Under the pieces are notes generated by a model, which did no database searches, was not told where the DNA came from, and saw nothing but the letters and a program-made list of their open reading frames with translations. Of a DNA stretch of 64,000 bases, positions 8,048-63,355 are shown piece by piece. Both the position numbers and the translations under genes were made by a program. Within the stretch, counting starts at the first letter, position 1. Every line of letters begins with the position of its first letter. The stretch is from the IMG/VR virus record IMGVR_UViG_3300030419_008158, positions 1 through 64,000 of that record; one strand, given 5' to 3'.

Positions 8048-8055
8048 AAATTCCT

Positions 8056-9396: not shown

Positions 9397-9405
9397 TATG
9401 AACCT

Positions 9406-14859: not shown

Positions 14860-15227
14860 TTGACTTCGTACTCCTTTTCGAACTCTTTGGAAGACACAGC
14901 TAAAAGATCTTCTTCTTCGGGATCCTCTTCAGATGGAATGTAAAACAAATCTGAAAGATTGCCTATGGGTTCTACTTCGTAAAGAATTTTTTCTTTACGA
15001 TTTTCATCCGATAAAATTCCCTCTTCGCCGGAAGGCTCAAAACGCGGAGCTTCTGGGGGCGATAGCATTATTGTAACTTCTCCGTTGGGCTCTTTTAAAA
15101 CTTGGTCGACTGTGTACTCGAACTGTGAGTCTTTATGCTTTACTTTCAAACCAGGAGAAATCACTATATTTCCGTGACTATCTTTTATGTCTGTTTCATT
15201 CATTTGATTCCTGCTAATTTTTGCCAT
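14856..15227 (-). CDS. Hypothetical protein
   Basis: In-operon ORF, start uncertain. Confidence 0.6.
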   Translation of the reverse strand: MAKISRNQMNETDIKDSHGNIVISPGLKVKHKDSQFEYTVDQVLKEPNGEVTIMLSPPEAPRFEPSGEEGILSDENRKEKILYEVEPIGNLSDLFYIPSEEDPEEEDLLAVSSKEFEKEYEVK

Positions 15228-16561: not shown

Positions 16562-16585
16562 CTCTAACCTCACGCTACTCTTTGG

Positions 16586-16618: not shown

Positions 16619-17047
16619 TCATTTTTTTGGACTAAACTGTCGAACTTTTTTTTGTGATTCCGCTAGTAGATCAAGGCCTGCTGTATCTCTATATGTTTCA
16701 TCAAATACAATCTCATCAATGTTGCCGTTGACGAGTGCTTTGGCACACATTTTGCAGGGTGATAGCGTGACATACATTTTCTTTTTCTTAGGGTTGTTGT
16801 AGTCAAGCTTTATAAGCGCATTAATTTCTGCATGAATACATCCACTTTGTCCAGGCTCTAAAGAATCAACTGTATTTGATCCACCTGATTGATCTCCGTT
16901 ATACCCAACTGAAAGAACTTGAGTATTGTCATCTGAAACTATCACAGCCCCTACTTTATAGCGAGGATCTATACTTCTTTCAGATATTGCATGTGCTACT
17001 TTCATCCATATGTCATCCCACTCAGGTCTATTTTTCTTTTTTGTCAC
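16619..17047 (-). CDS. dCMP deaminase
   Basis: RPEWDD, VGAVIV, GYNG, HAEINA, PCKMC. Confidence 0.92.
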   Translation of the reverse strand: MTKKKNRPEWDDIWMKVAHAISERSIDPRYKVGAVIVSDDNTQVLSVGYNGDQSGGSNTVDSLEPGQSGCIHAEINALIKLDYNNPKKKKMYVTLSPCKMCAKALVNGNIDEIVFDETYRDTAGLDLLAESQKKVRQFSPKK

Positions 17048-17942
17048 TAGGGCCCTCCGCAACTAAATTAGGAATTATGCTGGCATCGTCTGGTGTCACA
17101 TGCGCATCGTTCTGGAATACATCATCTACGTGAACGGTACTTGGAAGCGAAAATCCTGCTGCTTTTTTGTGTCCTCCTCCTCCAAATTTTTTAGCAATTT
17201 CACTTACATCTACGTCATCATGAAAACTTCTCAAGCTCACTCGATATTCGTGTCTATCATGATCATAATACCAGACTACAGCGTAGTCACAATCGGGTGA
17301 TAGTTTTGCTCCAATTTCACTCATCCAATGTGAGCTATTGACAACATAGACTTTCTTTCTATTGCATGTACGTAAAGTAGCTCTATCAGCTATTTTTTTT
17401 ATAACTGTTTTTGAATAGGCAAGTATGTAAGAACCTCTTTTGCATGCTTCTTGAAAAACACTGTCATCCTCGTATTCTGTAAATGCTTCAAATTCAAAGG
17501 GGACCATTGCAAAAGCTGCAGAAAATTCTTTGCTGTATTCTAATTCCCATTTCCAAAGATCACGATCTTCGATGTAGTCTATGAACTTAGGCGGTTTTTT
17601 GTTTGGATGGAAAAAGTCCCATGATAATCGTGCTCCCGATTTACTCATATCAAAAATTGTGTCTGTTATGTCATGAAGTTCTACAAGCGCAGATTTATGA
17701 TGATCTATCACAATAAGACTTTTTGATTTTTCAATCATTGCTTTTGTAGTAGAGTTGTCATAAGAAAAGTCTAAGATTGCAACATTTTTTCCTGTCACAT
17801 CGGGTGGGGGATCACCGTGTGTTGCTGCGTGATATTCAGCTTTATTTCCTAAAAGCTTCCATGCAGCCCACGCTGCACCAAAGCCATCGCTACAATTGGC
17901 GTGATATATTACAAAATCTATCTTGGCGGGATCATGACTCAT
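17028..17942 (-). CDS. DHH/DHHA1 phosphoesterase (NrnB-like)
   Basis: YHANCSDG, LDFS, IDHH, DRDLW, SLRS, GGGGHKKAAGF. Confidence 0.9.
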   Translation of the reverse strand: MSHDPAKIDFVIYHANCSDGFGAAWAAWKLLGNKAEYHAATHGDPPPDVTGKNVAILDFSYDNSTTKAMIEKSKSLIVIDHHKSALVELHDITDTIFDMSKSGARLSWDFFHPNKKPPKFIDYIEDRDLWKWELEYSKEFSAAFAMVPFEFEAFTEYEDDSVFQEACKRGSYILAYSKTVIKKIADRATLRTCNRKKVYVVNSSHWMSEIGAKLSPDCDYAVVWYYDHDRHEYRVSLRSFHDDVDVSEIAKKFGGGGHKKAAGFSLPSTVHVDDVFQNDAHVTPDDASIIPNLVAEGPSDKKEK

Positions 17943-17952
17943 ATTTCTCCGT

Positions 17953-18504
17953 TTATCTCAAAAACCCTGTGTGATCATGACATCTTGGTTCATACTTCTC
18001 AGAGCCTCCGACATCAATTTGACTCAATCCTTCCACTTTTGGAACAGTGTAGAAAGCATCTTTGCCGCATATGGGACAAACAGCAGGGCATACTTCTATT
18101 CTGGTAGCCCATGGAAACATTTTTTGAACTTCTGCAAACGTTTCTCCCCTAGCAGATAACTGAATTGTGGAAACAAAAACTGTCTTGCCTTTTGAGAACA
18201 AATCTATTAGCACATCAGACACACCGTCTATCATAAAAGCTTCATCAACTGCAATAATATCACAATCACGTGATGTGTCTAGTATATCGCTCCCAGAAGA
18301 GACACACTTTGCATCCCACTTATATCCTGCATGTGTGACAATGGAGTCAACTAAATATCTATGGTCCATTTTGGGCTTGTAAGCTGCTATCTTTTTAGAC
18401 TGGTATTTTGCTCTGTCGAGTGCTGCTAACATTCTACTGGTTTTTCCGCCAAACATCGGGCCCGTAAACAAGACAAACTCAGGATCAGTCTTGACGCTAC
18501 TCAT
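17953..18504 (-). CDS. tdk: Thymidine kinase
   Basis: GPMFGGKT, AVDEAF, CPICG, YEPRC. Confidence 0.92.
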   Translation of the reverse strand: MSSVKTDPEFVLFTGPMFGGKTSRMLAALDRAKYQSKKIAAYKPKMDHRYLVDSIVTHAGYKWDAKCVSSGSDILDTSRDCDIIAVDEAFMIDGVSDVLIDLFSKGKTVFVSTIQLSARGETFAEVQKMFPWATRIEVCPAVCPICGKDAFYTVPKVEGLSQIDVGGSEKYEPRCHDHTGFLR

Positions 18505-19513
18505 TCGTAAGTTCCCACCATGCAAGAGTTTTGTTCATACCTGACTCGAAGGATTCCTGAGGTGACCATCCCGTGTCAAATCCAATTTTCTGAACTGATG
18601 CGAGTGTGTGCTTTACATCCCCAGGACGCTCTGGGGCATTTTTAACTCCAAACCCTCCTACTTTTTCATCGAGCATTTTTAGAATTTCATTGTTTGAGAC
18701 TGCGCTTTCTGTGCCGACGTTATAATAGCGAAAACCTGAAAGGTTTTTGTGAGAAGCACATGTATACATCGCACTGGCAACATCTGTCACGTAGACCATA
18801 TCTCTAGTTTGCTCGCCATCACCATCTGACCGGAGCATCTCTTTGCTTTTAAGTTTGTCACACCATGCAGCAACAGCAGTTGCATACGGATTATCTCCAG
18901 TGCAACCCGGACCATATACATTAAAAAATCTTAGTGCAACACTATCAACATCATAGAGGTCACTAAACTGCTTCATGAAAAGCTCGCACACAAATTTTTG
19001 AAGCCCGTATGGACTGTTAGGGTTGCATTCAGTATCTTCGTGTGTAGCTGACACTTTTTTACCACCGGAAACATCTCCGTATACAGAAGACGACGATGCA
19101 AATACGAAACGATCAATATTTGCTTTGCGACAAGCGCTTAAAAGCTCAACAGTTTTCATCAAGTTCACTTCAGTTGAAATTGCTGGAAATTCAACACTAA
19201 AGCCCACCCTAGGGTTTGCTGCTAGATGAAAGACATGCGTATATCCGCCACTTACAAAGTGGCTCAAAACTTCAGAATCAACAAAGTCACCGGTAATAAC
19301 AACGGCATCTTTTTTAGATGTTGCCTCGTTCTTGTCAAGCGCTGCCACCAAGCTAGGAATTACTACACGCACCTCCAAACCCTTGTCTGTCAAATTAGAA
19401 ATATCCCCAGAGGATAAATCATCCACAACAGTTACGCTGGCACCCTCATCCACCAATTTTTTTACTAAGTGTGCACCAATAAATCCACACCCGCCTGTCA
19501 CTAACGCCTTCAT
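18497..19513 (-). CDS. NAD-dependent nucleotide-sugar epimerase/dehydratase (extended SDR)
   Basis: TGGCGFIG, HLAA, SSSSVYG, YGLQK, RFFNVYGP, GDGEQTRD. Confidence 0.93.
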   Translation of the reverse strand: MKALVTGGCGFIGAHLVKKLVDEGASVTVVDDLSSGDISNLTDKGLEVRVVIPSLVAALDKNEATSKKDAVVITGDFVDSEVLSHFVSGGYTHVFHLAANPRVGFSVEFPAISTEVNLMKTVELLSACRKANIDRFVFASSSSVYGDVSGGKKVSATHEDTECNPNSPYGLQKFVCELFMKQFSDLYDVDSVALRFFNVYGPGCTGDNPYATAVAAWCDKLKSKEMLRSDGDGEQTRDMVYVTDVASAMYTCASHKNLSGFRYYNVGTESAVSNNEILKMLDEKVGGFGVKNAPERPGDVKHTLASVQKIGFDTGWSPQESFESGMNKTLAWWELTNE

Positions 19514-20442
19514 TTTACCTCCTCATTGTCGTTCCATGATGGCAAATCATATCTAATGTGTGCACAATTTAGACGAACACTAATGTCTATTGCACTCACA
19601 GGTAATTTATAAACCTTCGCAACTTGCAAAGATAAATGACATAAAAATCTCAAATCAACAGAAGCATTTCTATGTACATCTGTGCTACGGAAGACCCCTA
19701 ACACCTTAAGCAACCCATTCCTTATGAGAAAATGTACAGAAGATATACAGGAGTCACTAGAATAGTAAAATCTACGACTGTCTAAGCCTTGCGGTTTGTT
19801 ATAAGGATTGTCGCCTGAAAATTCTTTTGCAAATATGTCTGTTGTTTTCTGCAAAATTTCGCGATAGTAATCCTTTTCACCCGGATGTTCCATTACTCTA
19901 GAAAAATCATTTTCAATTGACGGACTAAACTCTACGTTGATTGTTGCTTCTCCGTCACAAGCTTCAACTGCGTCAATTGTTGCTTTTCCAATAGAGTCGA
20001 TTCCGCCCTTGTCAAATGAGCACAGCCACTCTATGCATGTGTCTGCTAACTCATCTTGCGAAAGTACATCTTCTATCACTAAAACATTTGGAAAAGCTGC
20101 TATCTTTTTTGTTTCATCTTTGAAAATACTGTGCAATCTACAAAGGCTTTTTTTATCTTGAAATTCATCGCCCCGGACGTTCAGCCGCCTTATAAGCTCA
20201 TCTTTTGGCGGAATTACAATAATGACCCTATTGTTCAGATTTAAAAGTTCTCTTTTGAGACCCTGCCTATGACTTTTTGTATCTCTTCCAAACTGTCTTG
20301 CATAACAGATCATTGATAAAAAAGATCGATCTTGAATATTCCATAAAAAATTAGTCTTTTTATGAATTTTTTGATACAACGTTGTCTTGCCTGAAAGGTC
20401 AGGGCCTTCTATTGTCACTATTTGCGTTGGAAACTTTGTCAT
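19510..20442 (-). CDS. dNMP (thymidylate-kinase-like) kinase fused to truncated thymidylate-synthase-fold domain
   Basis: EGPDLSGKTT and QDRS; then SRR...SCISSVHF...FRSTDVHRNASVD...AHI; TAATG coupling to dnaE. Confidence 0.8.
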   Translation of the reverse strand: MTKFPTQIVTIEGPDLSGKTTLYQKIHKKTNFLWNIQDRSFLSMICYARQFGRDTKSHRQGLKRELLNLNNRVIIVIPPKDELIRRLNVRGDEFQDKKSLCRLHSIFKDETKKIAAFPNVLVIEDVLSQDELADTCIEWLCSFDKGGIDSIGKATIDAVEACDGEATINVEFSPSIENDFSRVMEHPGEKDYYREILQKTTDIFAKEFSGDNPYNKPQGLDSRRFYYSSDSCISSVHFLIRNGLLKVLGVFRSTDVHRNASVDLRFLCHLSLQVAKVYKLPVSAIDISVRLNCAHIRYDLPSWNDNEEVK

Positions 20443-23400
20443 TATGCAACTCTTCTTAGTTTGTATGCAGAAGTTGACATTCCCCAATTCGGATCATTAG
20501 AGACATGAGCCATCCAGAGCGTGTATTTGTCAATGTCAGAGTCAAGCTTGCCCCATACTCTCAACCATCCTGTCTTATGATTATTGTCTGTGACTCTGAG
20601 CCTATAAAAATCTTTTCCATTTTTTGTTTTCTTCTTGATCACATCAACAATAACAAACCAGCCGATACCCTTGCCTCCGGCGGGAACATCATGGACTGAG
20701 AGGACATTTTTATCTTTGAGGCGGTTCATCAAGCTTGTCGGAAACAAAAGGTCTCCATCAACTGTGGACGTCAAGTCATAAGAAAGTTCGACTTTTTCAA
20801 CACGACTCCAATCTTCCACATCAAAAAAATCAGATAAAATCTGGTCCAAAAATACTTTTGGTTCTTCGCCTGCCTTTTCGAGCTTTTTTATTTGTGTTTT
20901 AGTTAGGCCGTAAATACCTTTTCTGAGCTTTTCGTAATTTTTTTCATGAGTTAGTGCTTCTAGAAGCTGTCGATGACTCGAAACAGATCCGTTCGTAAAC
21001 TCTTCGAGAGACTGTAAAGCCTCAATTTTGCACAGTGATGAAAGACATGTCTTGTTCATTTTACTATGCTTCCACACGCCATTTTCATCATAAAACATGT
21101 CAACTAAAGACTTATACGGACGCATTTCCAAAATTTCTTTCATCGCGGTAGATCCAATACCTTTGACAGCTGAAAGTGGAGGTACAAATGCATTGATGTC
21201 TTTGGAAAATTCCCATTCTTCTCCCGAATAATTTACATCGATCTGTGCGAAATCAAATCCGTATGACTTTATCTCAGAAATTGCTTTTGACAAATTTGTA
21301 GGGCTATTATTTTCGGATTGAAGGATTGTAGCTAGCCACTCGTGCTCGTAATGGGTGTGCAGCCATGCTGCGTAATACGAATCAATGGCATAAGACACTG
21401 CGTGTGATTTATTGAAACCATACACAGAGAAAGCCTCGATAGTCTTCCAGAGAGCTTCTGTGATACTTCTATCAATGCCATGGAGACTGTAGGCACCTTC
21501 AACAAACTTTTTACGTGCAGCCTCTCGCTCCCCACCTTTTTTGCCCATTGTATCTAGTGACTTCTTAACCAGTGTCTTTCGAAGCTTATCAGACTCACCG
21601 GGCGAGAATCCAGCTAGTTCCACTGCCAGTGTCATAAACTGCTCTTGAAAAACAACAAAGTTAAATGTCGGCCCTAGCACTTTTTCGATCACAGGATGAT
21701 CATACTTGATCTCTGATGCATTCTTTTTAGCTTTTACATATTTCCTATGGACATTGGCTTTTAAGGGTCCTGGGCGGTAAATAGCTGTCAATGCAGCTAA
21801 CTCTGTAATGGTTGTCGGTTTGGCGGCTAGACAGAAACGTCTTGCACCTGTTGCTGTAAACTGAAACACGCCTGTAAATCTACCATCGTGATACACGTGC
21901 TTCCACACCTCAGGATCATCCTGCTGATTATACCGACAATTGAGATGCTCATCAAAGAACTTCTTGATATCAGCAAATGTCGGATTAGGATTTCCTTGCT
22001 TCTTGAGAATGCGACCGATGCAATTTTCAACATCTTTAAGCAGCGTCAATCCAAGAAAGTCAAACTTTAAAAATCCATTGTCTTCAAGATTTCTAAAGTT
22101 CATTCCTTCTGTCCAGGGGGTCTGGAGTTCGCCCCGAACACCGATGATGGGCATTGTAGATGCCAGCTCGTCTGGAGGCGCAATAATTACGCCGCCGGCG
22201 TGTCGACCAATGGATCGATTTTCCATAAATAGTGTTTCAACATGTTTTCCTACCTCTGGATACTTTTCCATAAAGTCGCGGTAGCCCTTAGAGTACTTCA
22301 GACAGTCCTCGTGCTTTAAGACGAAAACAGACTTTTCCTGATTTTCGTCTTTCGCATGTTTCATAACTTCATCTTGTAAAGGTCCTGTCATCTTATTGAC
22401 TTCTGCAAAGTCAATTCCATAAAATTTTGAAATATCTTTAATTAGTGACTTTAGCTTGAGTGTGTTAAAGTTAGATACAGGAATAACTGCGTCGTCGCCA
22501 AATAGTTCACGAGATGCATCAATCAAAGCATCACGATCGCCAGCATCAGTGTCGATATCAGGCCAAGATGTTCTGTGCCTCCCAAGAAATCGAGACCAGA
22601 GCAAACCGTGGGGCAAAGGATCAATTTGTGTAATCCCTAACAAGTAATTGACAAGTGATCCAGCACCTGATCCCCGACCCGGGCCGAAGAGAGTTCGCTT
22701 TTCAGCAAGATGGAAAATCTTGTACATTGCCAAAAAGTACGCTTCGTACCCGAGATACTTGATGTCAGACATCTCCTCCTTCATGCGTGCAACATATTCA
22801 GGTTTCGAAGCAAGACCCTCTCGAATCATAGCTTCTTTGACGAGATCAGCTAGCATTTTAAAAGCAGGCTTTTCAGGTGATCCAAACTTGGGCAGCTTTA
22901 CTGACGTGTCTATCCAAGTGTCTTCGCATTTTTGCCACGTGATGTCGTGAGTACGCTCAATTGCGTCTCGAACATTCTCTTCATGCCCCTTGTAGAAGTC
23001 GTATTCGTCATATCCCGCCTTGAACTCGTCCCACATCTGGTGAGCATTTTTAGGGTACAGCTTGCACTTCAAGTCTTCTTCCTTGGGAAGCATACTTTGA
23101 TCTAGCTTTGCGCCCATCCACCCAAGCTTTTTATAAAGTTCACGAGCCTGCCATTTTTGCGGATCAGGAAAATGAGAATCCGCAGTTGCAATGAGAGGGA
23201 TTCCTGTTTTTTGAGACAGATCCAGCAAGCATCTGTTTGTCAAATGCTGCGCTGGAAGATCGTTAAACTGCATTTCCAAGAAAAAATTGTCTTGTCCAAC
23301 ACAATCAACAAATCTATCTGTCATATTTTCAAGACGATTCATGATAGGATTGTAATCATCTAGATTGTTCATTAGGTCTGGATGAAGCTCATCAAATCTT

Positions 23401-24068
23401 AGACCTCCAAACTGTCGATAGATGAGGCCAGACGCGAGGCCGCCTACACACGCTGTAGAAACAATCAACCCTTCGCCGTGTTCCTTGAGCATTTTGTAGT
23501 CAATCCTAGGAAAACGATAAAAACCGTGCTTGTATGACTTTTTAACTAGTGTGAAAAGATTACCTAGACCTACTTGGTTTTTTGCAACCACGACAAGATG
23601 ATAATATCGCTTCCACTCAGGCTTATTCCCTCTGGAACGCTTTGTTTCCTCTTCGTCCTCAATAACATGGCCGCCTTGCTCGACCTCTTGGTCAGCAATA
23701 ATAACAGTGTTTTCTGTTGCAAGCTTTTCTTTTTGCTTTGAGGATTTGGCATCTTTGACAGCTTGTCGGTGCATGTCATAAGATTCTCGCCAATCTTCTA
23801 GTGACGGGACAAAGTAAAACTCGACGCCATAGATCTGTCGATACTTTCGGCCGGCCTTTTGCATTTTTACTGTGTGTGATCGGGCGTGAGCCAGGCCTGA
23901 GCCGTTACCGTGGTCTGTAAGTGCCCATGAGTCCATTCCTTGAGCTTCTGATAGAACAAAATCGATATGTTCTTTAGGATAACCCAATCCATCAAATGTG
24001 CTAAATGATGAGTGTGCGTGAAGGCCTGTAAAACGATTAGGTCTTCGAAACTTGCTAAATTGTGACAA
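20442..24068 (-). CDS. dnaE: DNA polymerase III alpha subunit (family C)
   Basis: PHP HAHSSFSTFDG/TDHG/DSH; GRGSGAGS; PDIDTD; GRHAGG; KFDFLGL; GFNKSHA; TTG start with AGGAG. Confidence 0.97.
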   Translation of the reverse strand: MSQFSKFRRPNRFTGLHAHSSFSTFDGLGYPKEHIDFVLSEAQGMDSWALTDHGNGSGLAHARSHTVKMQKAGRKYRQIYGVEFYFVPSLEDWRESYDMHRQAVKDAKSSKQKEKLATENTVIIADQEVEQGGHVIEDEEETKRSRGNKPEWKRYYHLVVVAKNQVGLGNLFTLVKKSYKHGFYRFPRIDYKMLKEHGEGLIVSTACVGGLASGLIYRQFGGLRFDELHPDLMNNLDDYNPIMNRLENMTDRFVDCVGQDNFFLEMQFNDLPAQHLTNRCLLDLSQKTGIPLIATADSHFPDPQKWQARELYKKLGWMGAKLDQSMLPKEEDLKCKLYPKNAHQMWDEFKAGYDEYDFYKGHEENVRDAIERTHDITWQKCEDTWIDTSVKLPKFGSPEKPAFKMLADLVKEAMIREGLASKPEYVARMKEEMSDIKYLGYEAYFLAMYKIFHLAEKRTLFGPGRGSGAGSLVNYLLGITQIDPLPHGLLWSRFLGRHRTSWPDIDTDAGDRDALIDASRELFGDDAVIPVSNFNTLKLKSLIKDISKFYGIDFAEVNKMTGPLQDEVMKHAKDENQEKSVFVLKHEDCLKYSKGYRDFMEKYPEVGKHVETLFMENRSIGRHAGGVIIAPPDELASTMPIIGVRGELQTPWTEGMNFRNLEDNGFLKFDFLGLTLLKDVENCIGRILKKQGNPNPTFADIKKFFDEHLNCRYNQQDDPEVWKHVYHDGRFTGVFQFTATGARRFCLAAKPTTITELAALTAIYRPGPLKANVHRKYVKAKKNASEIKYDHPVIEKVLGPTFNFVVFQEQFMTLAVELAGFSPGESDKLRKTLVKKSLDTMGKKGGEREAARKKFVEGAYSLHGIDRSITEALWKTIEAFSVYGFNKSHAVSYAIDSYYAAWLHTHYEHEWLATILQSENNSPTNLSKAISEIKSYGFDFAQIDVNYSGEEWEFSKDINAFVPPLSAVKGIGSTAMKEILEMRPYKSLVDMFYDENGVWKHSKMNKTCLSSLCKIEALQSLEEFTNGSVSSHRQLLEALTHEKNYEKLRKGIYGLTKTQIKKLEKAGEEPKVFLDQILSDFFDVEDWSRVEKVELSYDLTSTVDGDLLFPTSLMNRLKDKNVLSVHDVPAGGKGIGWFVIVDVIKKKTKNGKDFYRLRVTDNNHKTGWLRVWGKLDSDIDKYTLWMAHVSNDPNWGMSTSAYKLRRVA

Positions 24069-24081
24069 TGTTCTCTCCTAC

Positions 24082-24115
24082 AAAAATGCCCGCTTTTATT
24101 ATATCAAAGCGGGCA
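24082..24115 (-). terminator. Intrinsic terminator hairpin overlapping the dnaE promoter
   Basis: TGCCCGCTTT-GATATAATA-AAAGCGGGCA-TTTTT. Confidence 0.7.
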
Positions 24116-24126
24116 CAATCTTTACA
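24098..24126 (-). promoter_or_regulatory. Sigma-70-type promoter for dnaE
   Basis: TGTAAA-17 nt-TATAAT with extended TG. Confidence 0.65.
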
Positions 24127-24143
24127 CGTATTGAGTGACAGAA

Positions 24144-25106
24144 CTAATAAAATTCAGTCAAGTCGATATTGTTTTCTTTTGCCTGCTCAAGATATTTGAG
24201 TGGATTATAAGAACTGCATCCTTCGCGAATCGACTTCCATGCATCTTGAATTCCTTCGCTCAAGGTAAAATTTGGTTTCCAGCCATACTCCGTTCGAAAC
24301 TTTTCACTTGAAAGCCTGTGATTCCCTAGATAGTCTGTGTTAGGATACCAGTTGACACATCCAGCAAGATCAAATTCTGCCACGTCAGACATCAATTCTA
24401 TGATCGCACCTGTCTCCAGAGGAGTTTCGGCTGAAATATTAAAATCATCATTCCAGACGCTTCCGTGACACGCTACAGCAACTGCATCGCAAAAATCTTC
24501 GACATGCATATAATCTTTGTACTTCGCAGGATCCAAAAACATGTCAATTTTTTCATGTTTGTTTTTGAGATATGAATAAAAAGTCTTAGCGATCAAAGAG
24601 TTCATATCACCCACACCTCCGTAAGCAAATAGTGGGCGCACTATCAACCACTTGTCACAGTGTGTGGTTACGATATTTTCTGCTGCTAGCTTTTGTATCC
24701 CGTATAGTGTTCTTGGGTACTTTGTTGATTCTTCTGTGATCCAATCGTCCTGGTAATTTGGTGTATCATATATTACAGTAGTCCCAATATAACAAACAGG
24801 AATTTTGAGTCTTTTTGCTGCACGACAAATTGTATGTGTCCCTGTCACATTTGAAAGAGTCGATTCACCTGGATTTAATGCAACGACATCAGTCCCAACA
24901 ACAGCAGCATTGTGTATAATAAGGTCAACGCCATGTTTACGCAAGGCGTTGACCCACTCCTCAACTGTATTATTGTAGACGCATACTTCTGTGCCTCGCA
25001 TATTCATATCGTTGTTCAGCGTAACAGCTTCGCTGCCGAGCTTTAACAAAGACTTGGGCAAATTTTGTGCAATAAAGCCTTCTTCGCCTGTGATGAAAAT
25101 ACGCAT
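24144..25106 (-). CDS. NAD-dependent nucleotide-sugar epimerase/reductase (extended SDR)
   Basis: TGEEGFIA, HNAAVVG, YGIQK, KDYMHVED. Confidence 0.88.
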   Translation of the reverse strand: MRIFITGEEGFIAQNLPKSLLKLGSEAVTLNNDMNMRGTEVCVYNNTVEEWVNALRKHGVDLIIHNAAVVGTDVVALNPGESTLSNVTGTHTICRAAKRLKIPVCYIGTTVIYDTPNYQDDWITEESTKYPRTLYGIQKLAAENIVTTHCDKWLIVRPLFAYGGVGDMNSLIAKTFYSYLKNKHEKIDMFLDPAKYKDYMHVEDFCDAVAVACHGSVWNDDFNISAETPLETGAIIELMSDVAEFDLAGCVNWYPNTDYLGNHRLSSEKFRTEYGWKPNFTLSEGIQDAWKSIREGCSSYNPLKYLEQAKENNIDLTEFY

Positions 25107-25108
25107 TT

Positions 25109-25612
25109 TTACTCGATCGCGTCAGAATAGGGCTCAACAAGAAGCTGCTTTGCTTCGAAGCATCTGTTCAAATAGTCTTCGAGCTCCTCAATGCTGGTAC
25201 AAACCTTTACACCGCTTCTTGCAAGCATCAAGTTGAACTTAGCCCCCTCAGGCAACCCACCACAGTAATACACAATTGGCTTTTGATGTGCAAAGGCGAA
25301 GCCGGCTTCCCAAATAGTTCCAATATCCTTGTCTCTTGTATTGACAATAAGAAAGTTAGCTGCAGTAATTTCTCTGAGATTTCCTAAAAAGGTTTCATCT
25401 TGTGTTTCTTTGGGTGCATCAGGTGGACAGACAAAAATTCTTCTTGGACTTGCAAGATCGATCCAGTCTCTGTCATCACAAACTTTTTCTAGCTGGTCTA
25501 GTTCTTCAGCTTGTGTTGGATTGAACCATCCGGCTGCCAAATATACTTTTTGGGCAACAACTGGATTCTCTGTATTCTCTGTATTCTCTGTATTCTCTGT
25601 ATTCTCAGACAT
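25109..25612 (-). CDS. Nucleoside 2-deoxyribosyltransferase family protein
   Basis: VYLAAGWF, DIGTIWEAGFA, KPI, NLML; GGAGG before ATG 25612. Confidence 0.88.
   Translation of the reverse strand: MSENTENTENTENTENPVVAQKVYLAAGWFNPTQAEELDQLEKVCDDRDWIDLASPRRIFVCPPDAPKETQDETFLGNLREITAANFLIVNTRDKDIGTIWEAGFAFAHQKPIVYYCGGLPEGAKFNLMLARSGVKVCTSIEELEDYLNRCFEAKQLLVEPYSDAIE
25565..25606. repeat. 9-bp coding tandem repeat (ENT), about 4.7 copies
   Basis: attctctgt x4 + attctc. Confidence 0.9.
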
Positions 25613-25721
25613 TTCGCTTTCCTCCAAAATCTGTTATTTCGTTTTGCTTGTTGTTAGTAGTCATTTTTTCTCCTAAAGCTTATCCTTATAGCCTGGACTT
25701 GCTTGAATTTCATAATTTTCT

Positions 25722-26696
25722 TTAGACATTTTCTTCTTTTTTCCAAAAAATATTAGGAAGAGATGCATAAAAATCATGACGACGATCATGCTCCCACCCC
25801 CTTTTACAAACCGCTTTGTGAAAATTTCTTCCCCAACTCCCGGGTTTTTCAACAGGCCCTTCACCAAAGTCATACAGATTAAAGTGTCCGACCGATGTAT
25901 CATATTTTGTCCAGTAAGTACTATACACAAAATTATCACTAATTCTGTTTAGATAGCTGTCGAGCCACGGAAAAGGTGTGCCTGTCTCTTTACTGTCTTC
26001 AGCCTGTATGTGTTCGACAACTTCATAAAAAGTCCCCGCGTCATAAGCGTCTAGCTGGTCACCTATATGAAGATTCTTTAGGCCCATCTCTTTCTTGACT
26101 CTTTCAATTAGCCTTACACTCAGCCCGCTGACTTCACTAACGTATACGTCTGTTTCAGGTAAGTGATAGGCAAACCAAATAGAAGAAATTCCAATCCCTG
26201 CCCCCACATCCAATATTGTCTTGGGCACATAACCTAAGTGATCCCACCACATTAAAGTGTGAAATATCGGAGACGTATTTCTCATTTTGGCTTTGTCAAT
26301 CATCCCAGTCACATTTAAGCCGCACGATACAGTTTCAAACACATAATAGGGATCATCATAAATTGACACATCAAAATTTTGGCGCCAGCGCTGGAGCATG
26401 TCATTGATAATCTTGCTATCGCGATCACCCAGCTGGTCTAACTCTTCCTTGGAAAACTCTGACTTTAATTCATCTTTATAAATTTCTAGAAGTCGCTCAT
26501 AACTTAGGCCTGGGATTGATGGATCGTAGCCTCTTGTTTGTAAAAACTTTCCACCGTAATGATGCTCTTTATTGCCCCACTGGACATACTCGAATTTTTT
26601 AGTTCGCCTTCTTCCAGTGGGTGGCGTGTGCTGATAGTCGAAGTACTTTTTCTCTTTTCCTTCGACTTCCCAGGTTTTTAGAGCATTATCATCCAT
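25722..26696 (-). CDS. Class I SAM-dependent methyltransferase
   Basis: ILDVGAGIG, acidic residue after strand 2 (VSEVS), YEVVEHI. Confidence 0.8.
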   Translation of the reverse strand: MDDNALKTWEVEGKEKKYFDYQHTPPTGRRRTKKFEYVQWGNKEHHYGGKFLQTRGYDPSIPGLSYERLLEIYKDELKSEFSKEELDQLGDRDSKIINDMLQRWRQNFDVSIYDDPYYVFETVSCGLNVTGMIDKAKMRNTSPIFHTLMWWDHLGYVPKTILDVGAGIGISSIWFAYHLPETDVYVSEVSGLSVRLIERVKKEMGLKNLHIGDQLDAYDAGTFYEVVEHIQAEDSKETGTPFPWLDSYLNRISDNFVYSTYWTKYDTSVGHFNLYDFGEGPVEKPGSWGRNFHKAVCKRGWEHDRRHDFYASLPNIFWKKEENV

Positions 26697-27657
26697 TCTC
26701 GTAAGCTGCCTTCAATGCCTGGAACTCTTCCATTAAGTCACGCCACATAGTTGTAAAAACTTTCTCTCCAGTTCCATGTGTCCCGTTGAGCTCTTCACGT
26801 CGACAGGGATAAATTGTGTCGGCCTCATGATACTCAAACGTATCATTCTTTGGTTCAGGCTGGTACAAGTTTGTACCTCGGCTAATCCACTTATCACCTT
26901 CCTTTACGCGGAACGTATTGATATAATGGAAATCCGGTTTATCAAAATTGAACACTTGAGTCAGCTCAGGAATTGCCTTGCATGCGGCGATGGCCATCTC
27001 AGCAGCTAAAATATTGTCAGCTGCAGGCTGAATCTGCACGTCTTGTCTCTGACGGACGAATCCGATCAAATCTTTAAGATTAAGTCGCATATAGTAAAAA
27101 GAAGTCATGCATTTCGGCAAAATCATTCTTGCGTCCATCATAGAAATAACTTTAGAATCAGTCATATCTGCATACAGCTGCTTAGACTGTCTAACAATCT
27201 CCTTGTAGCGCTCCAGGTACTCGGGCGAGTTTTCGACAGACTCCGGAACAACGGCAGGATCATCTCTAAGATCGCGGTCGCCGGTACATTGGGCTGCAAA
27301 AGATCCTGCTCGATGTCGAATAATATGAGTTACTTCCTGAAAAGATAGGCCAGACAATCTAAACGTGAACCCCAGACATTCCATGGGAGTTGGAAGCGCA
27401 CGAAACTGCAAAACATCTAGAAGATTTTTACTCTTGATGCTATCCGGTACCTCGTCAGGCCTGATTTCACTAGGGTCGTCGGCCCAAGTAGCCTTTACGT
27501 AATGCCACGCGACATCTCGTGCTTGATTTGTTGTGGGGGCGTCAACCAATTCAACATTAAGAGCTTCTAAATTATTACAAAACTCTGTATCAAACGGTCT
27601 ACCAAATTTTAGATCCATCGGAAGTTCGATAGGCTCTAGATCATTATTTAACGGCAT
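26689..27657 (-). CDS. ThyX-like flavin-dependent enzyme (non-canonical motif)
   Basis: FTFRLSG, HIIRHRAGSFAAQCTGDR, DARMILP, NLKDLIGFVRQR. Confidence 0.82.
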   Translation of the reverse strand: MPLNNDLEPIELPMDLKFGRPFDTEFCNNLEALNVELVDAPTTNQARDVAWHYVKATWADDPSEIRPDEVPDSIKSKNLLDVLQFRALPTPMECLGFTFRLSGLSFQEVTHIIRHRAGSFAAQCTGDRDLRDDPAVVPESVENSPEYLERYKEIVRQSKQLYADMTDSKVISMMDARMILPKCMTSFYYMRLNLKDLIGFVRQRQDVQIQPAADNILAAEMAIAACKAIPELTQVFNFDKPDFHYINTFRVKEGDKWISRGTNLYQPEPKNDTFEYHEADTIYPCRREELNGTHGTGEKVFTTMWRDLMEEFQALKAAYENG

Positions 27658-27953
27658 TATTCTGCTCCTTTGTTGTTGGGCCGATTTGGATAGTATTCTT
27701 TTTTGGTCAAAAAATCAATCAAAATATCAGTTGCATTACGAAGACCACTTCTGTTGAATTCCGTATCTCCTACGCGAAGCCACGTCTCCTCTAAAAACTC
27801 ATCAAGCTCTTGACCGCACATCTTCAAGACAGGATCACTTAGAGCAGACAGATCATATTCTGGATTTTCCATCAACTCAAGAACGTAATGCGATACTCTC
27901 GACGAGTGATGCAACGTCGCCTTCTTCCCAATCGAATGCATAGATTCCATCAT
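27657..27953 (-). CDS. Hypothetical protein (start uncertain)
   Basis: TAATG coupling to ThyX-like gene. Confidence 0.5.
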   Translation of the reverse strand: MMESMHSIGKKATLHHSSRVSHYVLELMENPEYDLSALSDPVLKMCGQELDEFLEETWLRVGDTEFNRSGLRNATDILIDFLTKKEYYPNRPNNKGAE

Positions 27954-28818
27954 GATTCATAACTCCCATGTTGTAATTTCTTTTCGGCACAAGACACGGC
28001 ACACCGTGCATAACATACTCAGAGGCATGTTTAGGTGAGTCATCAATTGCACACACAACTTTTCCCTGCTTGTATGCTTCGAGCGAAGATACTGCAATAT
28101 ACTTTTCTGAACTTAGCTGCACAGAGTCAAATTCTTTTACATACTTGTCAAGCCATTCATATGTCTCGTGCATACACTTTAGCTCGGTTTCTGGGCGTGC
28201 TGTCAAAATATGAATCCAATACCCTTTTTTTCTGAGGGTTTTTAGACTTTTGATCACGTTATCACAAGTATCTATTTTTCTTAGACTTCCAGAATCAATA
28301 AACTCAATAAGCAGCTGGTCGCCTGACTTTCCTTCTACTGGTTTGCTTAGAAAATATTCATTTGATCTATGATCGACATTGCATCCCGGGTATGTTTCAT
28401 TTACCCAATCATAGAAATTTTGTCTAAATCTGGCAATTACGTCATCAACATCAACAACGACAACTTTTTGTCCGCTCCACTTTGATAGATTTTTTTCTGT
28501 TCGGACTCTTAGATTAGCATCTCTAGACTCAAACGCACTAATTGCATCATTTTCGTCATAGTCCCATAAATTTAGTATAGACAAGCAGTATCGATAAACA
28601 TCCATCGTTTCAAATAGAATATTCTGCATATGTGTAGGAGTGATGTTCGGCCTGTGCTCTCGATAGTGGACTGAATCTGCCAGCTGCGTGAGCTCGCTTT
28701 GCATCGCAAGACAAAGTGTCTTGTGCTTCTCAATTTTCTCCTGCTCAGACATTTTGTCTGAATTGTAGAAATTTCTAGAAAAATTCTTTTGCTTGTCAAG
28801 CATTTTCTTTAAGTCCAC
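27877..28818 (-). CDS. All-alpha NTP pyrophosphatase-like domain fused to HAD 5'(3')-deoxyribonucleotidase-like domain
   Basis: SELTQL...FETMDV; VVDVDDV, LTAR, IDDSP. Confidence 0.78.
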   Translation of the reverse strand: MDLKKMLDKQKNFSRNFYNSDKMSEQEKIEKHKTLCLAMQSELTQLADSVHYREHRPNITPTHMQNILFETMDVYRYCLSILNLWDYDENDAISAFESRDANLRVRTEKNLSKWSGQKVVVVDVDDVIARFRQNFYDWVNETYPGCNVDHRSNEYFLSKPVEGKSGDQLLIEFIDSGSLRKIDTCDNVIKSLKTLRKKGYWIHILTARPETELKCMHETYEWLDKYVKEFDSVQLSSEKYIAVSSLEAYKQGKVVCAIDDSPKHASEYVMHGVPCLVPKRNYNMGVMNHDGIYAFDWEEGDVASLVESIALRS

Positions 28819-28830
28819 AGGTTTTCTCCT

Positions 28831-29061
28831 CTAAAAAGGATTGTTGACAAGATAAGCGACGTACTCTATAATCTCTTGTTCGTCGCTATCTTCGCAATCC
28901 TTGTAAGATTTACCCATCTTTGTCTTGATACAGCGCCAAATATGAGCGTATGGGTTTCTTGCAGAATGATTTGGACTATCAGGAAGATTTCCTTCTAATG
29001 CTTTTCCGCCAAGCGCAACTGCTTGTCGTATTCTTTCAGCAACTTCAGGAGACATCATCAA
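28831..29061 (-). CDS. Hypothetical protein
   Basis: In-operon; RNPYAHIW..IK..MG.SYKD. Confidence 0.6.
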   Translation of the reverse strand: MMMSPEVAERIRQAVALGGKALEGNLPDSPNHSARNPYAHIWRCIKTKMGKSYKDCEDSDEQEIIEYVAYLVNNPF

Positions 29062-29444
29062 TAGCCGCCATTAATTCTATCTAAATTTATTTGGCCTTTT
29101 TTCATGTACATTTTATACATTTCTTCATAAGAAATTCCTGAGTACAGGAGAATGCCTATTAGATAATGCAAAACATCGCTTAGCTCCTCTGTGTAAGCGT
29201 CTCGATCAAAATCACTTATTTCAGTGCTTCTATGACTTTTGGCGTTCTTAAGAAGCATATTAGATTCAAATAGCTCATGCATACATTCGTGTGCAAGAGA
29301 TTTTAGAAATTGTTGACTCTTTTTTTCAGAAAGATCGAGTGGAAAATCAGGAAAGTCTCTTTTGTCACGAAGCAGCTCAAGAAACTCTTTTTGCTGCTCA
29401 AACATAATTTCAAACTTTCCCATATCACTCATCAGAAGACTCAT
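29058..29444 (-). CDS. Dimeric dCTPase/dUTPase (T4 gp56-like, all-alpha NTP-PPase)
   Basis: HELFE, EELSDVLHY, YMKKGQINLDRINGGY C-terminus. Confidence 0.8.
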   Translation of the reverse strand: MSLLMSDMGKFEIMFEQQKEFLELLRDKRDFPDFPLDLSEKKSQQFLKSLAHECMHELFESNMLLKNAKSHRSTEISDFDRDAYTEELSDVLHYLIGILLYSGISYEEMYKMYMKKGQINLDRINGGY

Positions 29445-29640
29445 TCAATTTATTAGCTTCTTCTCGCAACTTCTCAAGATTATTTTCAAAGTTCTCAGAA
29501 TACTCAGGATCGGGATCCAGAATACCATCTTCGTCAACAAACCTCATTGTGCGAAGATTGTCAGTAATGTCTGTACCCGTAAGAAGGGCAAGCTGCAAAA
29601 CTCGTACGAGCTGTGAAATGCTGTTGTCAGAAAGACGCAT
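29425..29640 (-). CDS. Hypothetical protein
   Basis: GGAGG SD; first gene after promoter. Confidence 0.65.
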   Translation of the reverse strand: MRLSDNSISQLVRVLQLALLTGTDITDNLRTMRFVDEDGILDPDPEYSENFENNLEKLREEANKLNESSDE

Positions 29641-29661
29641 GTTATACCTCCATATTGAATA

Positions 29662-29690
29662 ATTCTAGTAAATTTCTTTTCGTTTTTCAA
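29662..29690 (-). promoter_or_regulatory. Sigma-70-type promoter heading the nucleotide cluster
   Basis: TTGAAA-17 nt-TAGAAT. Confidence 0.65.
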
Positions 29691-30512: not shown

Positions 30513-30528
30513 ATAACACCTCTGTTGT

Positions 30529-57584: not shown

Positions 57585-57804
57585 TTCTTTCTCTTCTACT
57601 GACGACTTCTTTGGCAAACTCGGGATTTTTCATATTTTCTTTGAACATATCTAAAAAATTAAAATGATGCGAAAGGTCTGCCAAAAGCTTTTCTTTTACT
57701 GTAGGAGTCATATTTGTCATGAGTGCCTCAATGTACCCAGCAAGAGGATTTCCCTCTTCTTTCAACTGCTTTAACCGATTTTCGACGTTCTCTTTCTTAC
57801 TCAT
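57577..57804 (-). CDS. Small hypothetical protein
   Basis: AAGGAG SD before ATG 57804. Confidence 0.6.
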   Translation of the reverse strand: MSKKENVENRLKQLKEEGNPLAGYIEALMTNMTPTVKEKLLADLSHHFNFLDMFKENMKNPEFAKEVVSRRERNG

Positions 57805-63349: not shown

Positions 63350-63355
63350 GTTCAC

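What the first reader, a model, noticed from the sequence alone, without database searches (positions are those of the whole stretch)
16619..29690. DnaE-centred cluster resembling an undescribed pre-replicative DNA base-modification pathway
Seen: one co-oriented, mostly coupled run starting at a promoter at 29662-29690. It encodes a gp56-like dCTPase/dUTPase, an NTP-PPase-HAD fusion, a non-canonical ThyX, a SAM methyltransferase, a deoxyribosyltransferase, an SDR, DnaE, a kinase-TS-fold fusion, a second SDR, TK, a DHH phosphoesterase and dCMP deaminase. Known: T4 replaces cytosine using dCTPase (gp56), a TS-fold dCMP modifier (gp42), dNMP kinase (gp1) and dCMP deaminase. Inference: the same logic operates here with a family C polymerase, and extra sugar, flavin and methyl enzymes point to a different modified pyrimidine, possibly sugar-derived and built at the nucleotide level.
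Basis: partly seen in the sequence, partly recalled or inferred. Interest (0 to 1): 0.92.

Follow-up and report, generated by a model that had tools for sequence, protein, structure and literature searches.

The report
Phage pyrimidine-rerouting gene module around DnaE
A marine jumbo phage carries, next to its DNA polymerase, a conserved set of nucleotide enzymes that includes two uncharacterised pyrimidine-modifying enzymes, so its DNA may hold a non-standard cytosine, though only chemistry on the DNA can show this.

Summary
All 12 named functions sit at the stated coordinates on the minus strand, tightly packed. The window is part of a 284-kb IMG/VR phage contig.

The strongest signals:
- The gene after DnaE fuses a TMPK/dNK-like kinase to a roughly 150-aa "mini" thymidylate-synthase fold. 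Cys, Arg-Arg, Arg-Ser and His are invariant, and Asp sits at the E. coli ThyA N177 position, the known cytosine-specificity switch. Its best structural matches are phage dCMP hydroxylase and hydroxymethylase.
- The ThyX is a distinct clade (R-x-R-x7-C-[ST]-G-D-[KR]), about 100 aa longer than usual.
- Kinase, mini-TS, ThyX-like, deoxyribosyltransferase, a 5'-deoxynucleotidase, a dUTPase_2-type pyrophosphatase and DnaE recur in two unrelated Firmicutes-type phage groups. These include cultured Geobacillus phage GR1 and about 45-kb phages. The fusions differ: kinase with mini-TS in one group, kinase with deoxyribosyltransferase in another.

- The methyltransferase is a lineage-specific insert (1 of 75 loci).
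- The second SDR is optional.
- No glycosyltransferase was found.
- Co-orientation and the promoter match are not special.

T4-like pre-replicative cytosine modification is the best reading (about 0.45). It is unproven, and the chemistry is unknown.

The parts
29662..29690 (-). Promoter-like site TTGAAA-17-TAGAAT in the 50-nt gap between the Fpg/Nei gene and the first small ORF
   Evidence: It is a 10/12 consensus match, but such sites are no more frequent here than in shuffles (37 vs 35.4), so it is unverified.
29425..29640 (-). Small ORF (71 aa) of unknown function, conserved at the head of the cluster
   Evidence: No Pfam or PHROG hit. Homologue present in 52/61 related loci with enough upstream sequence.
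29058..29444 (-). All-alpha NTP pyrophosphatase of the dUTPase_2 / T4 gp56 kind (128 aa)
   Evidence: PF08761 26.8 bits and phrog_12184. BLASTP to T4 gp56 gives 31% over 61 aa, E 7e-9. E57, E60, E86, E87 and D90 are invariant in 59/59. Present in 62/62 loci.
28831..29061 (-). Small ORF (76 aa), unknown, found only in the closest relatives
27877..28818 (-). Two-domain protein (313 aa): all-alpha dUTPase_2-like N-domain with a degenerate acidic motif, plus a HAD 5'-(deoxy)nucleotidase-like C-domain
   Evidence: PF08761 on aa 2-98 and PF06941 NT5C on aa 118-227. HAD residues D123, D125, D126, T206 and D259 are invariant in 54/54, while the N-domain acidic residues vary. Present in 54/62 loci.
27657..27953 (-). 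ORF (98 aa) overlapping the previous gene; unknown, weakly conserved
26689..27657 (-). ThyX-like flavoenzyme (322 aa) of a distinct clade
   Evidence: PF02511 68 bits, but TIGR02170 42 bits against a cut-off of 88. Mapping to T. maritima ThyX: Ser88->Cys124, Arg90/Tyr91->Gly126/Asp127, His53->Leu88, with the phosphate arginines kept. C124, G126 and D127 are invariant or nearly so in 120 clade members. ThyX fold confirmed, top Foldseek hit PolB UMP/dUMP methylase.
25722..26696 (-). Probable class-I SAM methyltransferase (324 aa); an insert specific to this phage lineage
   Evidence: MTS 21.6 bits, below the cut-off. Motif I visible. No phage match. Present between ThyX-like and NDT in 1/75 loci.
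25109..25627 (-). Nucleoside 2-deoxyribosyltransferase (172 aa)
   Evidence: PF05014 49.6 bits and phrog_7995. PDB 6evs E 3e-5. Y29, D101, E107, N132 and the C-terminal I-E are conserved. Present in 65/65 loci.
24144..25106 (-). Extended SDR (320 aa), epimerase/RmlD-like, substrate unknown
   Evidence: PF01370 91.6 bits. TGxxGxxG and Y135xxxK139 conserved. Present in 34/40 loci.
20442..24068 (-). DnaE-type replicative DNA polymerase (family C)
   Evidence: PHP, DNA_pol3_alpha, finger and HHH_6 domains. Best cultured-phage relatives are about 30% identical.
20008..20442 (-). Kinase domain of the fusion protein (TMPK / deoxynucleoside-kinase-like P-loop kinase)
   Evidence: phrog_761. Foldseek hit to YorR 3kb2, TMt 0.65. 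GxDxxGK[TS], DR and RxxxRGD invariant in 117 members. The start ATG overlaps the DnaE stop as TAATG.
19510..19965 (-). Mini thymidylate-synthase-fold domain of the fusion protein (about 150 aa)
   Evidence: AF2 pLDDT 90. Foldseek top hits: HY126 dCMP hydroxylase 9iqu, 9iqc, T4 dCMP hydroxymethylase, MilA. Profile vs PDB: T4 dCH E 8.8e-4. hhalign to T4 gp42 89.7%. C247, R238/R239, R267/S268, D278 and H310 are 117/117.
18497..19513 (-). GalE-type extended SDR (338 aa), NDP-sugar 4-epimerase-like; optional in relatives
   Evidence: PF01370 174.6 bits. PDB 6dnt E 2.8e-47. Present in 8/11 loci and absent from L082.
17953..18525 (-). Thymidine kinase (TK1 type)
   Evidence: PF00265 112 bits.
17028..17942 (-). 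DHH/DHHA1 phosphoesterase (NrnA/RecJ-like)
   Evidence: PF02272 36.5 bits (above its cut-off); PF01368 only 19.7 bits against a cut-off of 28.1. NF053633 weak, 33 bits against a cut-off of 350.
16619..17062 (-). dCMP deaminase
   Evidence: PF00383 76 bits.
29691..30581 (-). Fpg/Nei DNA glycosylase immediately upstream; syntenic in many relatives but it moves within the cluster in others

Best explanation
This is the nucleotide-pool half of the replication module of a widespread family of uncultured marine jumbo phages. Its conserved core reroutes pyrimidine deoxynucleotides before replication.

Proposed mechanism. The gene functions rest on homology. The order of steps and the substrates are inferred.
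1. The gp56-type pyrophosphatase turns dCTP and/or dUTP into monophosphates.
2. The mini-TS domain binds dCMP. Asp278 reads N3/N4, Cys247 adds to C6, and the domain installs a C5 substituent. Hydroxymethyl is the best guess; methyl or hydroxyl are possible.
3. The fused kinase phosphorylates that product, which the host Cmk might refuse. Host NDK then makes the triphosphate and the co-translated DnaE incorporates it.
4. The HAD 5'-nucleotidase, the deoxyribosyltransferase and TK form a nucleoside-level loop. The loop recycles deoxyribose from unwanted dNMPs.
5. dCMP deaminase and the ThyX-like flavoenzyme supply dTMP, or a second C5-modified pyrimidine.

The two SDRs and the methyltransferase are accessories, not core.
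For: - **TS fold.** The fold and the cytosine-type active site are shown by structure, profile and conservation.
- **Specificity rules.** N177D as the dCMP switch and acidic or small residues at L143 for non-methyl products are published rules (PMC13326640). In this family the L143-equivalent is Ser in 115/117.
- **Gene coupling.** Kinase and TS are fused in about 300-aa proteins across hundreds of clusters. Where they are split, only a homing-endonuclease gene separates them. The DnaE and fusion genes overlap as TAATG.
- **Recurrence.** The same set recurs in Geobacillus phage GR1 and relatives, and in about 45-kb phages: kinase, mini-TS, ThyX-like, NDT, 5'-deoxynucleotidase, dUTPase_2-type PPase and DnaE. 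In both groups the nucleotidase is a non-homologous HD/YfbR enzyme. In the 45-kb group the kinase is fused to NDT, and no PPase was detected in the stretch examined.
- **Pyrophosphatase.** The catalytic motif of the gp56-like enzyme is invariant.
- **Both TS superfamilies.** Jumbo phages normally carry either a TS or a ThyX, not both (PMC7824862). T4-type phages carry two TS-superfamily enzymes (td and gp42) because one of them makes a modified base (own knowledge).
- **Precedent.** Co-expressing a phage TS homologue with its dNMP kinase is enough to put a modified C into E. coli DNA.
Against: - No chemical data exist for any member.
- The mini-TS lacks about 100 aa of a normal TS, including the N- and C-terminal segments that close over folate. 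Its cofactor, and even whether it turns over, are unknown.
- Pfam's TS model does not detect it.
- Every other enzyme here (ThyX, dCMP deaminase, TK, kinase, NDT, nucleotidase, pyrophosphatase) also fits plain dTTP supply and salvage.
- No DNA glycosyltransferase, C-specific nuclease or other T4-style accessory was found in the 64 kb.
- Only 64 of 284 kb could be read, so a canonical ThyA elsewhere cannot be excluded.
- The kinase could be a nucleoside kinase rather than a dNMP kinase.
Confidence: 0.45

Rival explanations
1. Ordinary precursor supply with canonical DNA. The module scavenges host DNA and dCTP and funnels deoxyribose into dTTP for a 41% GC genome.
- Pyrophosphatase and 5'-nucleotidase give deoxynucleosides.
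- NDT swaps bases.
- TK and the kinase re-phosphorylate.
- dCMP deaminase plus an active, merely divergent ThyX make dTMP.
- The mini-TS is a dCMP-binding or regulatory domain, or a minor enzyme, and leaves no mark in DNA.
For: - All the enzymes except the mini-TS have textbook salvage roles.
- The ThyX-like keeps the RxR, R147 and R174 equivalents and the ThyX fold.
- GR1 has no other annotated thymidylate synthase, so the ThyX-like may be its dTMP source.
- From my own knowledge, E. coli has a comparable route to dUMP through dCTP, dCMP, deoxycytidine (YfbR) and thymidine kinase.
- The contigs assemble readily from shotgun metagenomes.
Against: - It does not explain why the TS catalytic Cys, His, Arg set and Asp at the N177 position are 117/117 invariant.
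- It does not explain why that domain is always tied to a kinase and to the ThyX-like gene in three lineages, including 45-kb genomes with little room for luxuries.
- It does not explain why the ThyX clade has fixed Cys and Asp in the substrate loop.
Confidence: 0.3
2. Thymine, not cytosine, is the replaced base. This is SPO1/PBS-style logic, with two variants.
- Shared steps: the PPase-HAD protein acts as a fused dTTPase/dTMPase and NDT disposes of the thymidine.
- Variant A: dCMP deaminase feeds dUMP, and the ThyX-like enzyme traps its exocyclic-methylene intermediate to give 5-hydroxymethyl-dUMP or another 5-substituted dUMP.
- Variant B: the ThyX-like enzyme, with its natural Cys at the Ser88 site and Asp in the base-reading loop, is itself a flavin-dependent dCMP C5-modifier.
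For: - The known 5hmdU pathway uses dTTPase, dTMPase, dCMP deaminase, a hydroxymethylase and a dNMP kinase (PMC8989533).
- The HAD domain belongs to the NT5C family, and its catalytic motifs are invariant.
- In the Firmicutes-type phages the nucleotidase function is kept through a non-homologous HD enzyme.
- The clade-defining substitutions in the ThyX-like substrate loop are fixed.
Against: - A phage TK would re-phosphorylate thymidine and work against a dTMPase.
- No ThyX homologue is known to make anything but a methyl group on (d)UMP.
- The N-domain of the PPase-HAD protein lacks a complete catalytic acidic motif.
- The nucleotidase substrate is unknown.
Confidence: 0.15
3. One reading: a sugar-derived or methylated pyrimidine assembled at the nucleotide level. 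The two SDRs and the SAM methyltransferase would be integral steps.
For: SDR320 is co-conserved next to NDT and DnaE in 34/40 marine loci and keeps its catalytic motifs. SDR338 is a bona fide GalE-like enzyme.
Against: - The methyltransferase is in 1/75 loci.
- SDR338 is in 8/11 loci and absent from L082.
- No SDR was seen in the examined stretches of the GR1-like and 45-kb groups that share the core (GR1 record annotation; Pfam on L088 and L089).
- No nucleotidyltransferase, sugar kinase or glycosyltransferase was found in the window.
- The inter-gene slots hold unrelated inserts.
Confidence: 0.05

Closest known systems
T4 hydroxymethylcytosine pathway (gp56 dCTPase, gp42 dCMP hydroxymethylase, gp1 dNMP kinase, Cd dCMP deaminase)
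   Same: - It has a gp56-family pyrophosphatase.
- It has a TS-fold enzyme with the Cys nucleophile, the Arg/Ser phosphate cage and Asp at the specificity position, aligned to gp42 C148, R168/S169 and D179.
- It has a phage kinase and a dCMP deaminase.
   Different: - The TS fold is cut down to about 150 aa and fused to the kinase.
- The kinase is TMPK/dNK-like rather than demonstrably gp1-like.
- The polymerase is family C.
- A ThyX-like enzyme, NDT and a 5'-nucleotidase are core members.
- No glucosyltransferase was found.
- The product is unknown.
5-hydroxycytosine pathway of RB69, DLP3 and HY126 (flavin-using TS homologue AfhB / 5hodCMP synthase plus dNMP kinase)
   Same: The best structural matches of the mini-TS are 9iqu and 9iqc. 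A flavoenzyme gene is tightly linked to it. The D169N signature of 5hodCMP synthases occurs in 16/117 family members and in GR1.
   Different: - The window protein has Asp, not Asn, at the D169 position.
- The domain is smaller than AfhB.
- No arabinose-nucleotide genes or arabinosyltransferases are present.
- The linked flavoenzyme has the ThyX fold and is a separate protein.
SPO1-type 5-hydroxymethyluracil pathway (dTTPase, dTMPase, dCMP deaminase, dUMP hydroxymethylase, dNMP kinase)
   Same: It combines a pyrophosphatase, a 5'-nucleotidase, a dCMP deaminase, a C5-modifying enzyme and a kinase (PMC8989533).
   Different: The TS-fold domain carries Asp, not Asn, so uracil is an unlikely substrate for it. 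A TK is present.
Atypical ThyX enzymes (PolB UMP/dUMP methylase of polyoxin biosynthesis; Corynebacterium glutamicum ThyX)
   Same: Same fold. They are the top Foldseek hits, with TM about 0.73.
   Different: They share only 16-20% identity. The clade here has Cys for Ser88, Gly-Asp for Arg90-Tyr91, Leu for His53, and about 100 extra conserved residues.
Lactobacillus-type nucleoside 2-deoxyribosyltransferase salvage
   Same: The catalytic Glu, the Tyr/Asp/Asn contacts and the conserved C-terminus are kept.
   Different: Here the enzyme is phage-encoded and locked to DnaE, ThyX-like and a nucleotidase. In one lineage it is fused to the kinase.

Membership tests
T4-type pre-replicative cytosine replacement | dCTP/dUTP pyrophosphatase of the gp56 (all-alpha NTP-PPase) family | tested here: met
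   PF08761. BLASTP to T4 gp56 E 7e-9. Catalytic acidic residues 59/59. Substrate not tested.
T4-type pre-replicative cytosine replacement | TS-fold enzyme with a Cys nucleophile and Asp at the ThyA N177 position | tested here: met
   C247 and D278 are invariant in 117 members.
T4-type pre-replicative cytosine replacement | Full-length TS fold with folate-closing N- and C-terminal segments | tested here: not met
   The domain is about 150 aa against 246 aa in T4 gp42. Only gp42 residues 147-218 align. No PF00303 hit.
T4-type pre-replicative cytosine replacement | Phage kinase for the modified dNMP | tested here: inconclusive
   The P-loop, DR and lid motifs are invariant and the kinase is fused to the TS domain. 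Whether it acts on a nucleoside or a dNMP is unknown.
T4-type pre-replicative cytosine replacement | Non-canonical cytosine in virion DNA | not testable with these tools
   Needs LC-MS/MS or raw long-read signal.
Flavin-dependent thymidylate synthase ThyX | Thy1 domain and ThyX fold | tested here: met
   PF02511 68 bits. Foldseek TM about 0.73 to ThyX and PolB.
Flavin-dependent thymidylate synthase ThyX | Equivalog-level score (TIGR02170) | tested here: not met
   42.3 bits against a cut-off of 87.9.
Flavin-dependent thymidylate synthase ThyX | ThyX motif RHR-x7-S followed by G-R-Y | tested here: not met
   The motif here is R-[HY]-R-x7-C-[ST]-G-D-[KR]. C, G and D are 119-120 of 120.
Classical thymidylate synthase ThyA (PF00303) | Pfam model match | tested here: not met
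   No Pfam family at E<=0.01. No classical ThyA-length (about 264 aa or longer, non-fusion) protein among the 150 best profile hits in 1.84 billion proteins.
5hodCMP synthase (RB69 gp48 / AfhB type) | Asn at the ThyA D169 position | tested here: not met
   The window has D270. Asn occurs in 16/117 relatives and in GR1.
Nucleoside 2-deoxyribosyltransferase | Pfam domain plus the catalytic Glu and the 5'-OH-binding Asp/Asn | tested here: met
   PF05014 49.6 bits. E107, D101, N132 and Y29 are invariant. The mapping to the Lactobacillus enzyme residues is from my own knowledge.
HAD 5'(3')-deoxyribonucleotidase (NT5C) | DxDx[TV] nucleophile motif, Thr/Ser motif II and Asp motif IV | tested here: met
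   D123-V-D125-D-V, T206 and D259 are 54/54. The Pfam score is 25.8 against 24.8, only just above the cut-off.
Class I SAM methyltransferase | Pfam match above the cut-off, and motif I | tested here: inconclusive
   Best hit is 21.6 bits against 23. Motif I (ILDVGAGIG) is present.
SPO1-type thymine replacement | TS-fold dUMP hydroxymethylase with Asn at the specificity position | tested here: not met
   Asp in 117/117.

The most novel reading that the evidence does not exclude
The ThyX-like flavoenzyme (natural Cys and Asp in the substrate loop) and the mini-TS act together, sequentially or as a complex. They make a pyrimidine deoxynucleotide not yet described in DNA. A deoxyribosyltransferase, nucleotidase and kinase loop works at the nucleoside level as an obligatory part of the route. 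This pathway would mark the genomes of a very abundant group of marine jumbo phages and of Bacillus/Geobacillus phages.
Probability: 0.2. Interest if true: 0.9.

Novelty: new variant of a known kind. Interest (0 to 1): 0.74.

Why it matters
- **Reach beyond T4-like phages.** If these phages replace a pyrimidine, pre-replicative DNA modification would extend to family-C-polymerase phages. These are abundant in the ocean: 111 IMG/VR loci, 368 mini-TS clusters at 50% identity and 969 ThyX-like clusters at 90% identity. It would also extend to Firmicutes phages.
- **New enzyme types.** It would add a minimal TS fold fused to a kinase and a Cys/Asp ThyX clade. Both would be useful for enzymology and for making modified DNA.
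- **Practical consequences.** It would bear on how such phages evade restriction and CRISPR, and on biases in marine viromics.
- **A route to a test.** Geobacillus phage GR1 is a cultured, harmless system in which the question can be settled quickly.

Tried and rejected
- **Megablast of the cluster against GenBank phages:** no match.
- **tblastn of the kinase-TS fusion and of the GR1 mini-TS against cultured phages:** nothing beyond GR1 itself.
- **Scan of 185,579 species genomes for the ThyX-like clade:** none found, so no host could be assigned. The window has no tRNAs.
- **The conserved 457-aa protein downstream (15200-16573) as a hidden glycosyltransferase:** it has no Pfam or PHROG hit, only hypothetical homologues, and a charged, hydrophobic conservation pattern that does not look enzymatic to me (no secondary-structure prediction was run). 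I dropped it.
- **Other unknown ORFs and the two giant ORFs:** no informative domains.
- **PDB sequence search with the PPase-HAD protein:** uninformative.
- **Literature searches for AfhB, a GR1 DNA modification, ThyX homologues acting on dCMP, and marine DnaE jumbo phages:** no description of this module.
- **Palindrome avoidance:** none (median O/E about 1.0). This does not discriminate between the readings.
- **The idea that the cluster is one tight operon:** rejected, because the variable slots between core genes hold unrelated inserts.

Full report
**Source and setting.** The window matches IMG/VR contig IMGVR_UViG_3300030419_008158 (284,429 bp) at 100% over the ThyX-like gene. Every ORF of 100 aa or more that looks like a gene lies on the minus strand. 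GC is 41%. Around the finding lies a large replication module:
- Upstream: Fpg/Nei, ATP-dependent ligase, topoisomerase II A and B, a short HhH-GPD protein, ClpP, ribonucleotide reductase, DnaB, FEN, RecA, gp32-like SSB and a PolA-like fragment.
- Downstream: a SOD-like protein, a second FEN, GroEL and a sigma-70 factor.

No cultured phage resembles it at the DNA level. The DnaE is at most about 30% identical to those of cultured phages.

**The observation.** Pfam, PHROGs and NCBIfam confirm the listed functions at the listed coordinates.
- The 128-aa protein is a dUTPase_2/MazG-type pyrophosphatase. It resembles the C-terminal part of T4 gp56 and has an invariant EExxE...EExxD motif.
- The 313-aa protein joins a dUTPase_2-like N-domain to a HAD NT5C-like domain. 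The HAD motifs are invariant, but the N-domain's acidic motif is degenerate. It may bind rather than cleave a triphosphate.
- The methyltransferase call is weak but plausible.
- The genes are packed. DnaE and the next gene overlap as TAATG.
- The promoter-like site exists but is statistically unremarkable. Co-orientation is a property of the whole window.

**The kinase/TS-fold fusion.** Pfam sees nothing in this protein.
- *Structure.* An AlphaFold model built on 16 homologues is confident (pLDDT 90). Foldseek splits it into a YorR-like nucleoside/nucleotide kinase and a TS fold. The best TS-fold matches are all cytosine-nucleotide enzymes: HY126 dCMP hydroxylase AfhB, a flavin dCMP monooxygenase, T4 dCMP hydroxymethylase and MilA.
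- *Profile searches.* A profile of the C-terminal domain finds T4 dCMP hydroxymethylase first in the PDB. It aligns to T4 gp42 so that C247, R267/S268, D278 and H310 match gp42 C148, R168/S169, D179 and H216.
- *Conservation.* In 117 family members these residues, the Arg-Arg pair and the kinase motifs are all invariant. The D169 equivalent is Asp in 101 and Asn in 16. The L143 equivalent is Ser in 115.
- *What the residues mean.* Published work ties N177D to dCMP specificity, a non-bulky or acidic L143 to non-methyl products, and D169N to 5-hydroxy-dCMP synthesis (PMC13326640).
- *Size.* The domain is only about 150 aa. It lacks the segments that close over folate in ThyA.
- *Distribution.* A search of 1.84 billion representative proteins found 368 clusters. 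Nearly all full-length ones are about 300-aa fusions, and the top hits include no protein of classical ThyA length and architecture. In one contig the two halves are separate genes with a homing-endonuclease-like gene between them.

**The ThyX-like protein.** It has the ThyX fold but fails the equivalog threshold. By sequence it hits only T. maritima ThyX in the PDB.
- Mapped to that enzyme it keeps R78, R80, R147 and R174.
- It has Cys for Ser88, Gly-Asp for Arg90-Tyr91, Leu for His53 and His for Gln75.
- It carries conserved N- and C-terminal extensions of about 100 aa in all.
- Cys124, Gly126 and Asp127 are fixed in 119-120 of 120 members of the wider clade. That clade holds at least 969 protein clusters.
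- It is the most conserved protein of the cluster, at 57-89% identity across 80 loci.

**Conservation of the neighbourhood.** In 80 IMG/VR loci and one NCBI metagenome contig, most gene pairs follow one shared order, although no single locus carries the complete run: HhH-GPD, Fpg, small ORF, pyrophosphatase, PPase-HAD, ThyX-like, NDT, SDR320, DnaE, kinase/mini-TS, (SDR338), TK, DHH, dCMP deaminase. Counting only loci where the position is covered gives:

| Gene | Present / covered |
|---|---|
| NDT | 65/65 |
| Pyrophosphatase | 62/62 |
| PPase-HAD | 54/62 |
| SDR320 | 34/40 |
| Kinase/mini-TS | 8/8 |
| SDR338 | 8/11 |
| Methyltransferase | 1/75 |

The gaps between core genes hold varied inserts: a relocated Fpg, VWA, endonuclease-I-like and DUF7487 proteins.

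**The same core in unrelated phages.**
- *GR1 group.* The only cultured phage with a full-length ThyX-like protein is Geobacillus phage GR1, at 46% identity.
  - There the ThyX-like gene overlaps (TAATG) a 151-aa "hypothetical" gene that is a stand-alone mini-TS (hhalign 96.5%).
  - A 145-aa P-loop protein matches the kinase half (96.2%), and DnaE follows.
  - The same region holds NDT, an HD protein, DHH, a dUTPase_2-type enzyme and TK. No ThyA is annotated anywhere in GR1.
  - An 84.6-kb IMG/VR relative shows the same order. Its HD protein is a YfbR-like 5'-deoxynucleotidase.
- *45-kb group.* A third group of about 45-kb contigs, with a CHAP endolysin, has overlapping genes for a kinase-NDT fusion, a YfbR-like nucleotidase, ThyX-like, a 189-aa mini-TS (95.9%; RSCD, Asp at the N177 position, GSLHVY) and DnaE. 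dCMP deaminase lies nearby.
- *What this shows.* The kinase is fused to the mini-TS in one lineage and to NDT in another. The nucleotidase function is kept by two unrelated folds. Together these argue that kinase, mini-TS, ThyX-like, NDT, nucleotidase and DnaE work together.

**Interpretation.** A TS-superfamily and a ThyX-superfamily enzyme in one phage is unusual, since the two are anticorrelated in jumbo phages (PMC7824862). It is the pattern expected when one of them makes something other than dTMP. The fixed Cys and Asp of the mini-TS, its fusion to a kinase and its coupling to the polymerase gene fit the T4, RB69 and SPO1 paradigm of making a modified dNMP and phosphorylating it with a dedicated phage kinase. 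The nucleoside-level loop (nucleotidase, NDT, TK) has no counterpart in those paradigms and is the least understood part. Every enzyme except the mini-TS is equally at home in plain dTTP supply. The mini-TS is so reduced that its cofactor is unknown.

**Limits.**
- Only 64 of 284 kb could be read.
- Hosts are unknown.
- No sequence test can show what is in the DNA.
- Residue mapping to the Lactobacillus NDT and the E. coli deoxycytidine route rests on my own knowledge, not on a tool result.

Noticed in passing
window 46058-47176 (-): A 372-aa ORF matches only part of the family A DNA polymerase domain (PF00476, profile positions 110-348 of 381). It sits in a phage whose replicase is DnaE. It could be a split or truncated second polymerase.
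   Followed up: no
window 50676-57617 and 57818-63355 (-): Two giant ORFs (2313 and 1845 aa) sit in a higher-GC stretch (about 45-47% against about 40%). They have no significant Pfam domains.
   Followed up: partly
window 29691-30581 and 34949-35374 (-); L079:11981-12796: Fpg/Nei and a short HhH-GPD glycosylase are syntenic with the head of the cluster in many relatives. In other relatives the Fpg gene sits between NDT and SDR320. Glycosylases kept beside a possible base-modification module may be worth testing on modified and unmodified DNA.
   Followed up: partly
L084:2499-3990: The kinase and the mini-TS are separate genes here. A NUMOD3 (homing-endonuclease-like) gene lies between them and an HNH gene is nearby. 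It looks like a fusion gene split by a mobile element.
   Followed up: partly
L089:8561-9478: A 306-aa protein fuses a thymidylate-kinase-like P-loop domain to a nucleoside 2-deoxyribosyltransferase in phages of about 45 kb. I did not find this architecture described.
   Followed up: partly
L081 (Geobacillus phage GR1, OK896991.1) 7977-9931, 11286-11885, 23306-24538: Near its ThyX-like/mini-TS pair, GR1 also carries an HD protein, a 460-aa glycosyltransferase, a nitroreductase-type flavin reductase, an amidoligase and a gamma-glutamylcyclotransferase. This set makes GR1 a candidate for hypermodified DNA.
   Followed up: no
window 3026-3718, 3967-5580, 14170-14859, 36505-37107 (-): The phage encodes its own sigma-70 factor, a GroEL-type chaperonin, a protein with only the C-terminal domain of Fe/Mn superoxide dismutase, and ClpP.
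   Followed up: no
P0314: A ThyX-like protein 83% identical to the IMG/VR relative L088 of the GR1 group is annotated in Bacillus wiedmannii on an 84-kb contig. GR1-type elements therefore seem to occur in the Bacillus cereus group.
   Followed up: no
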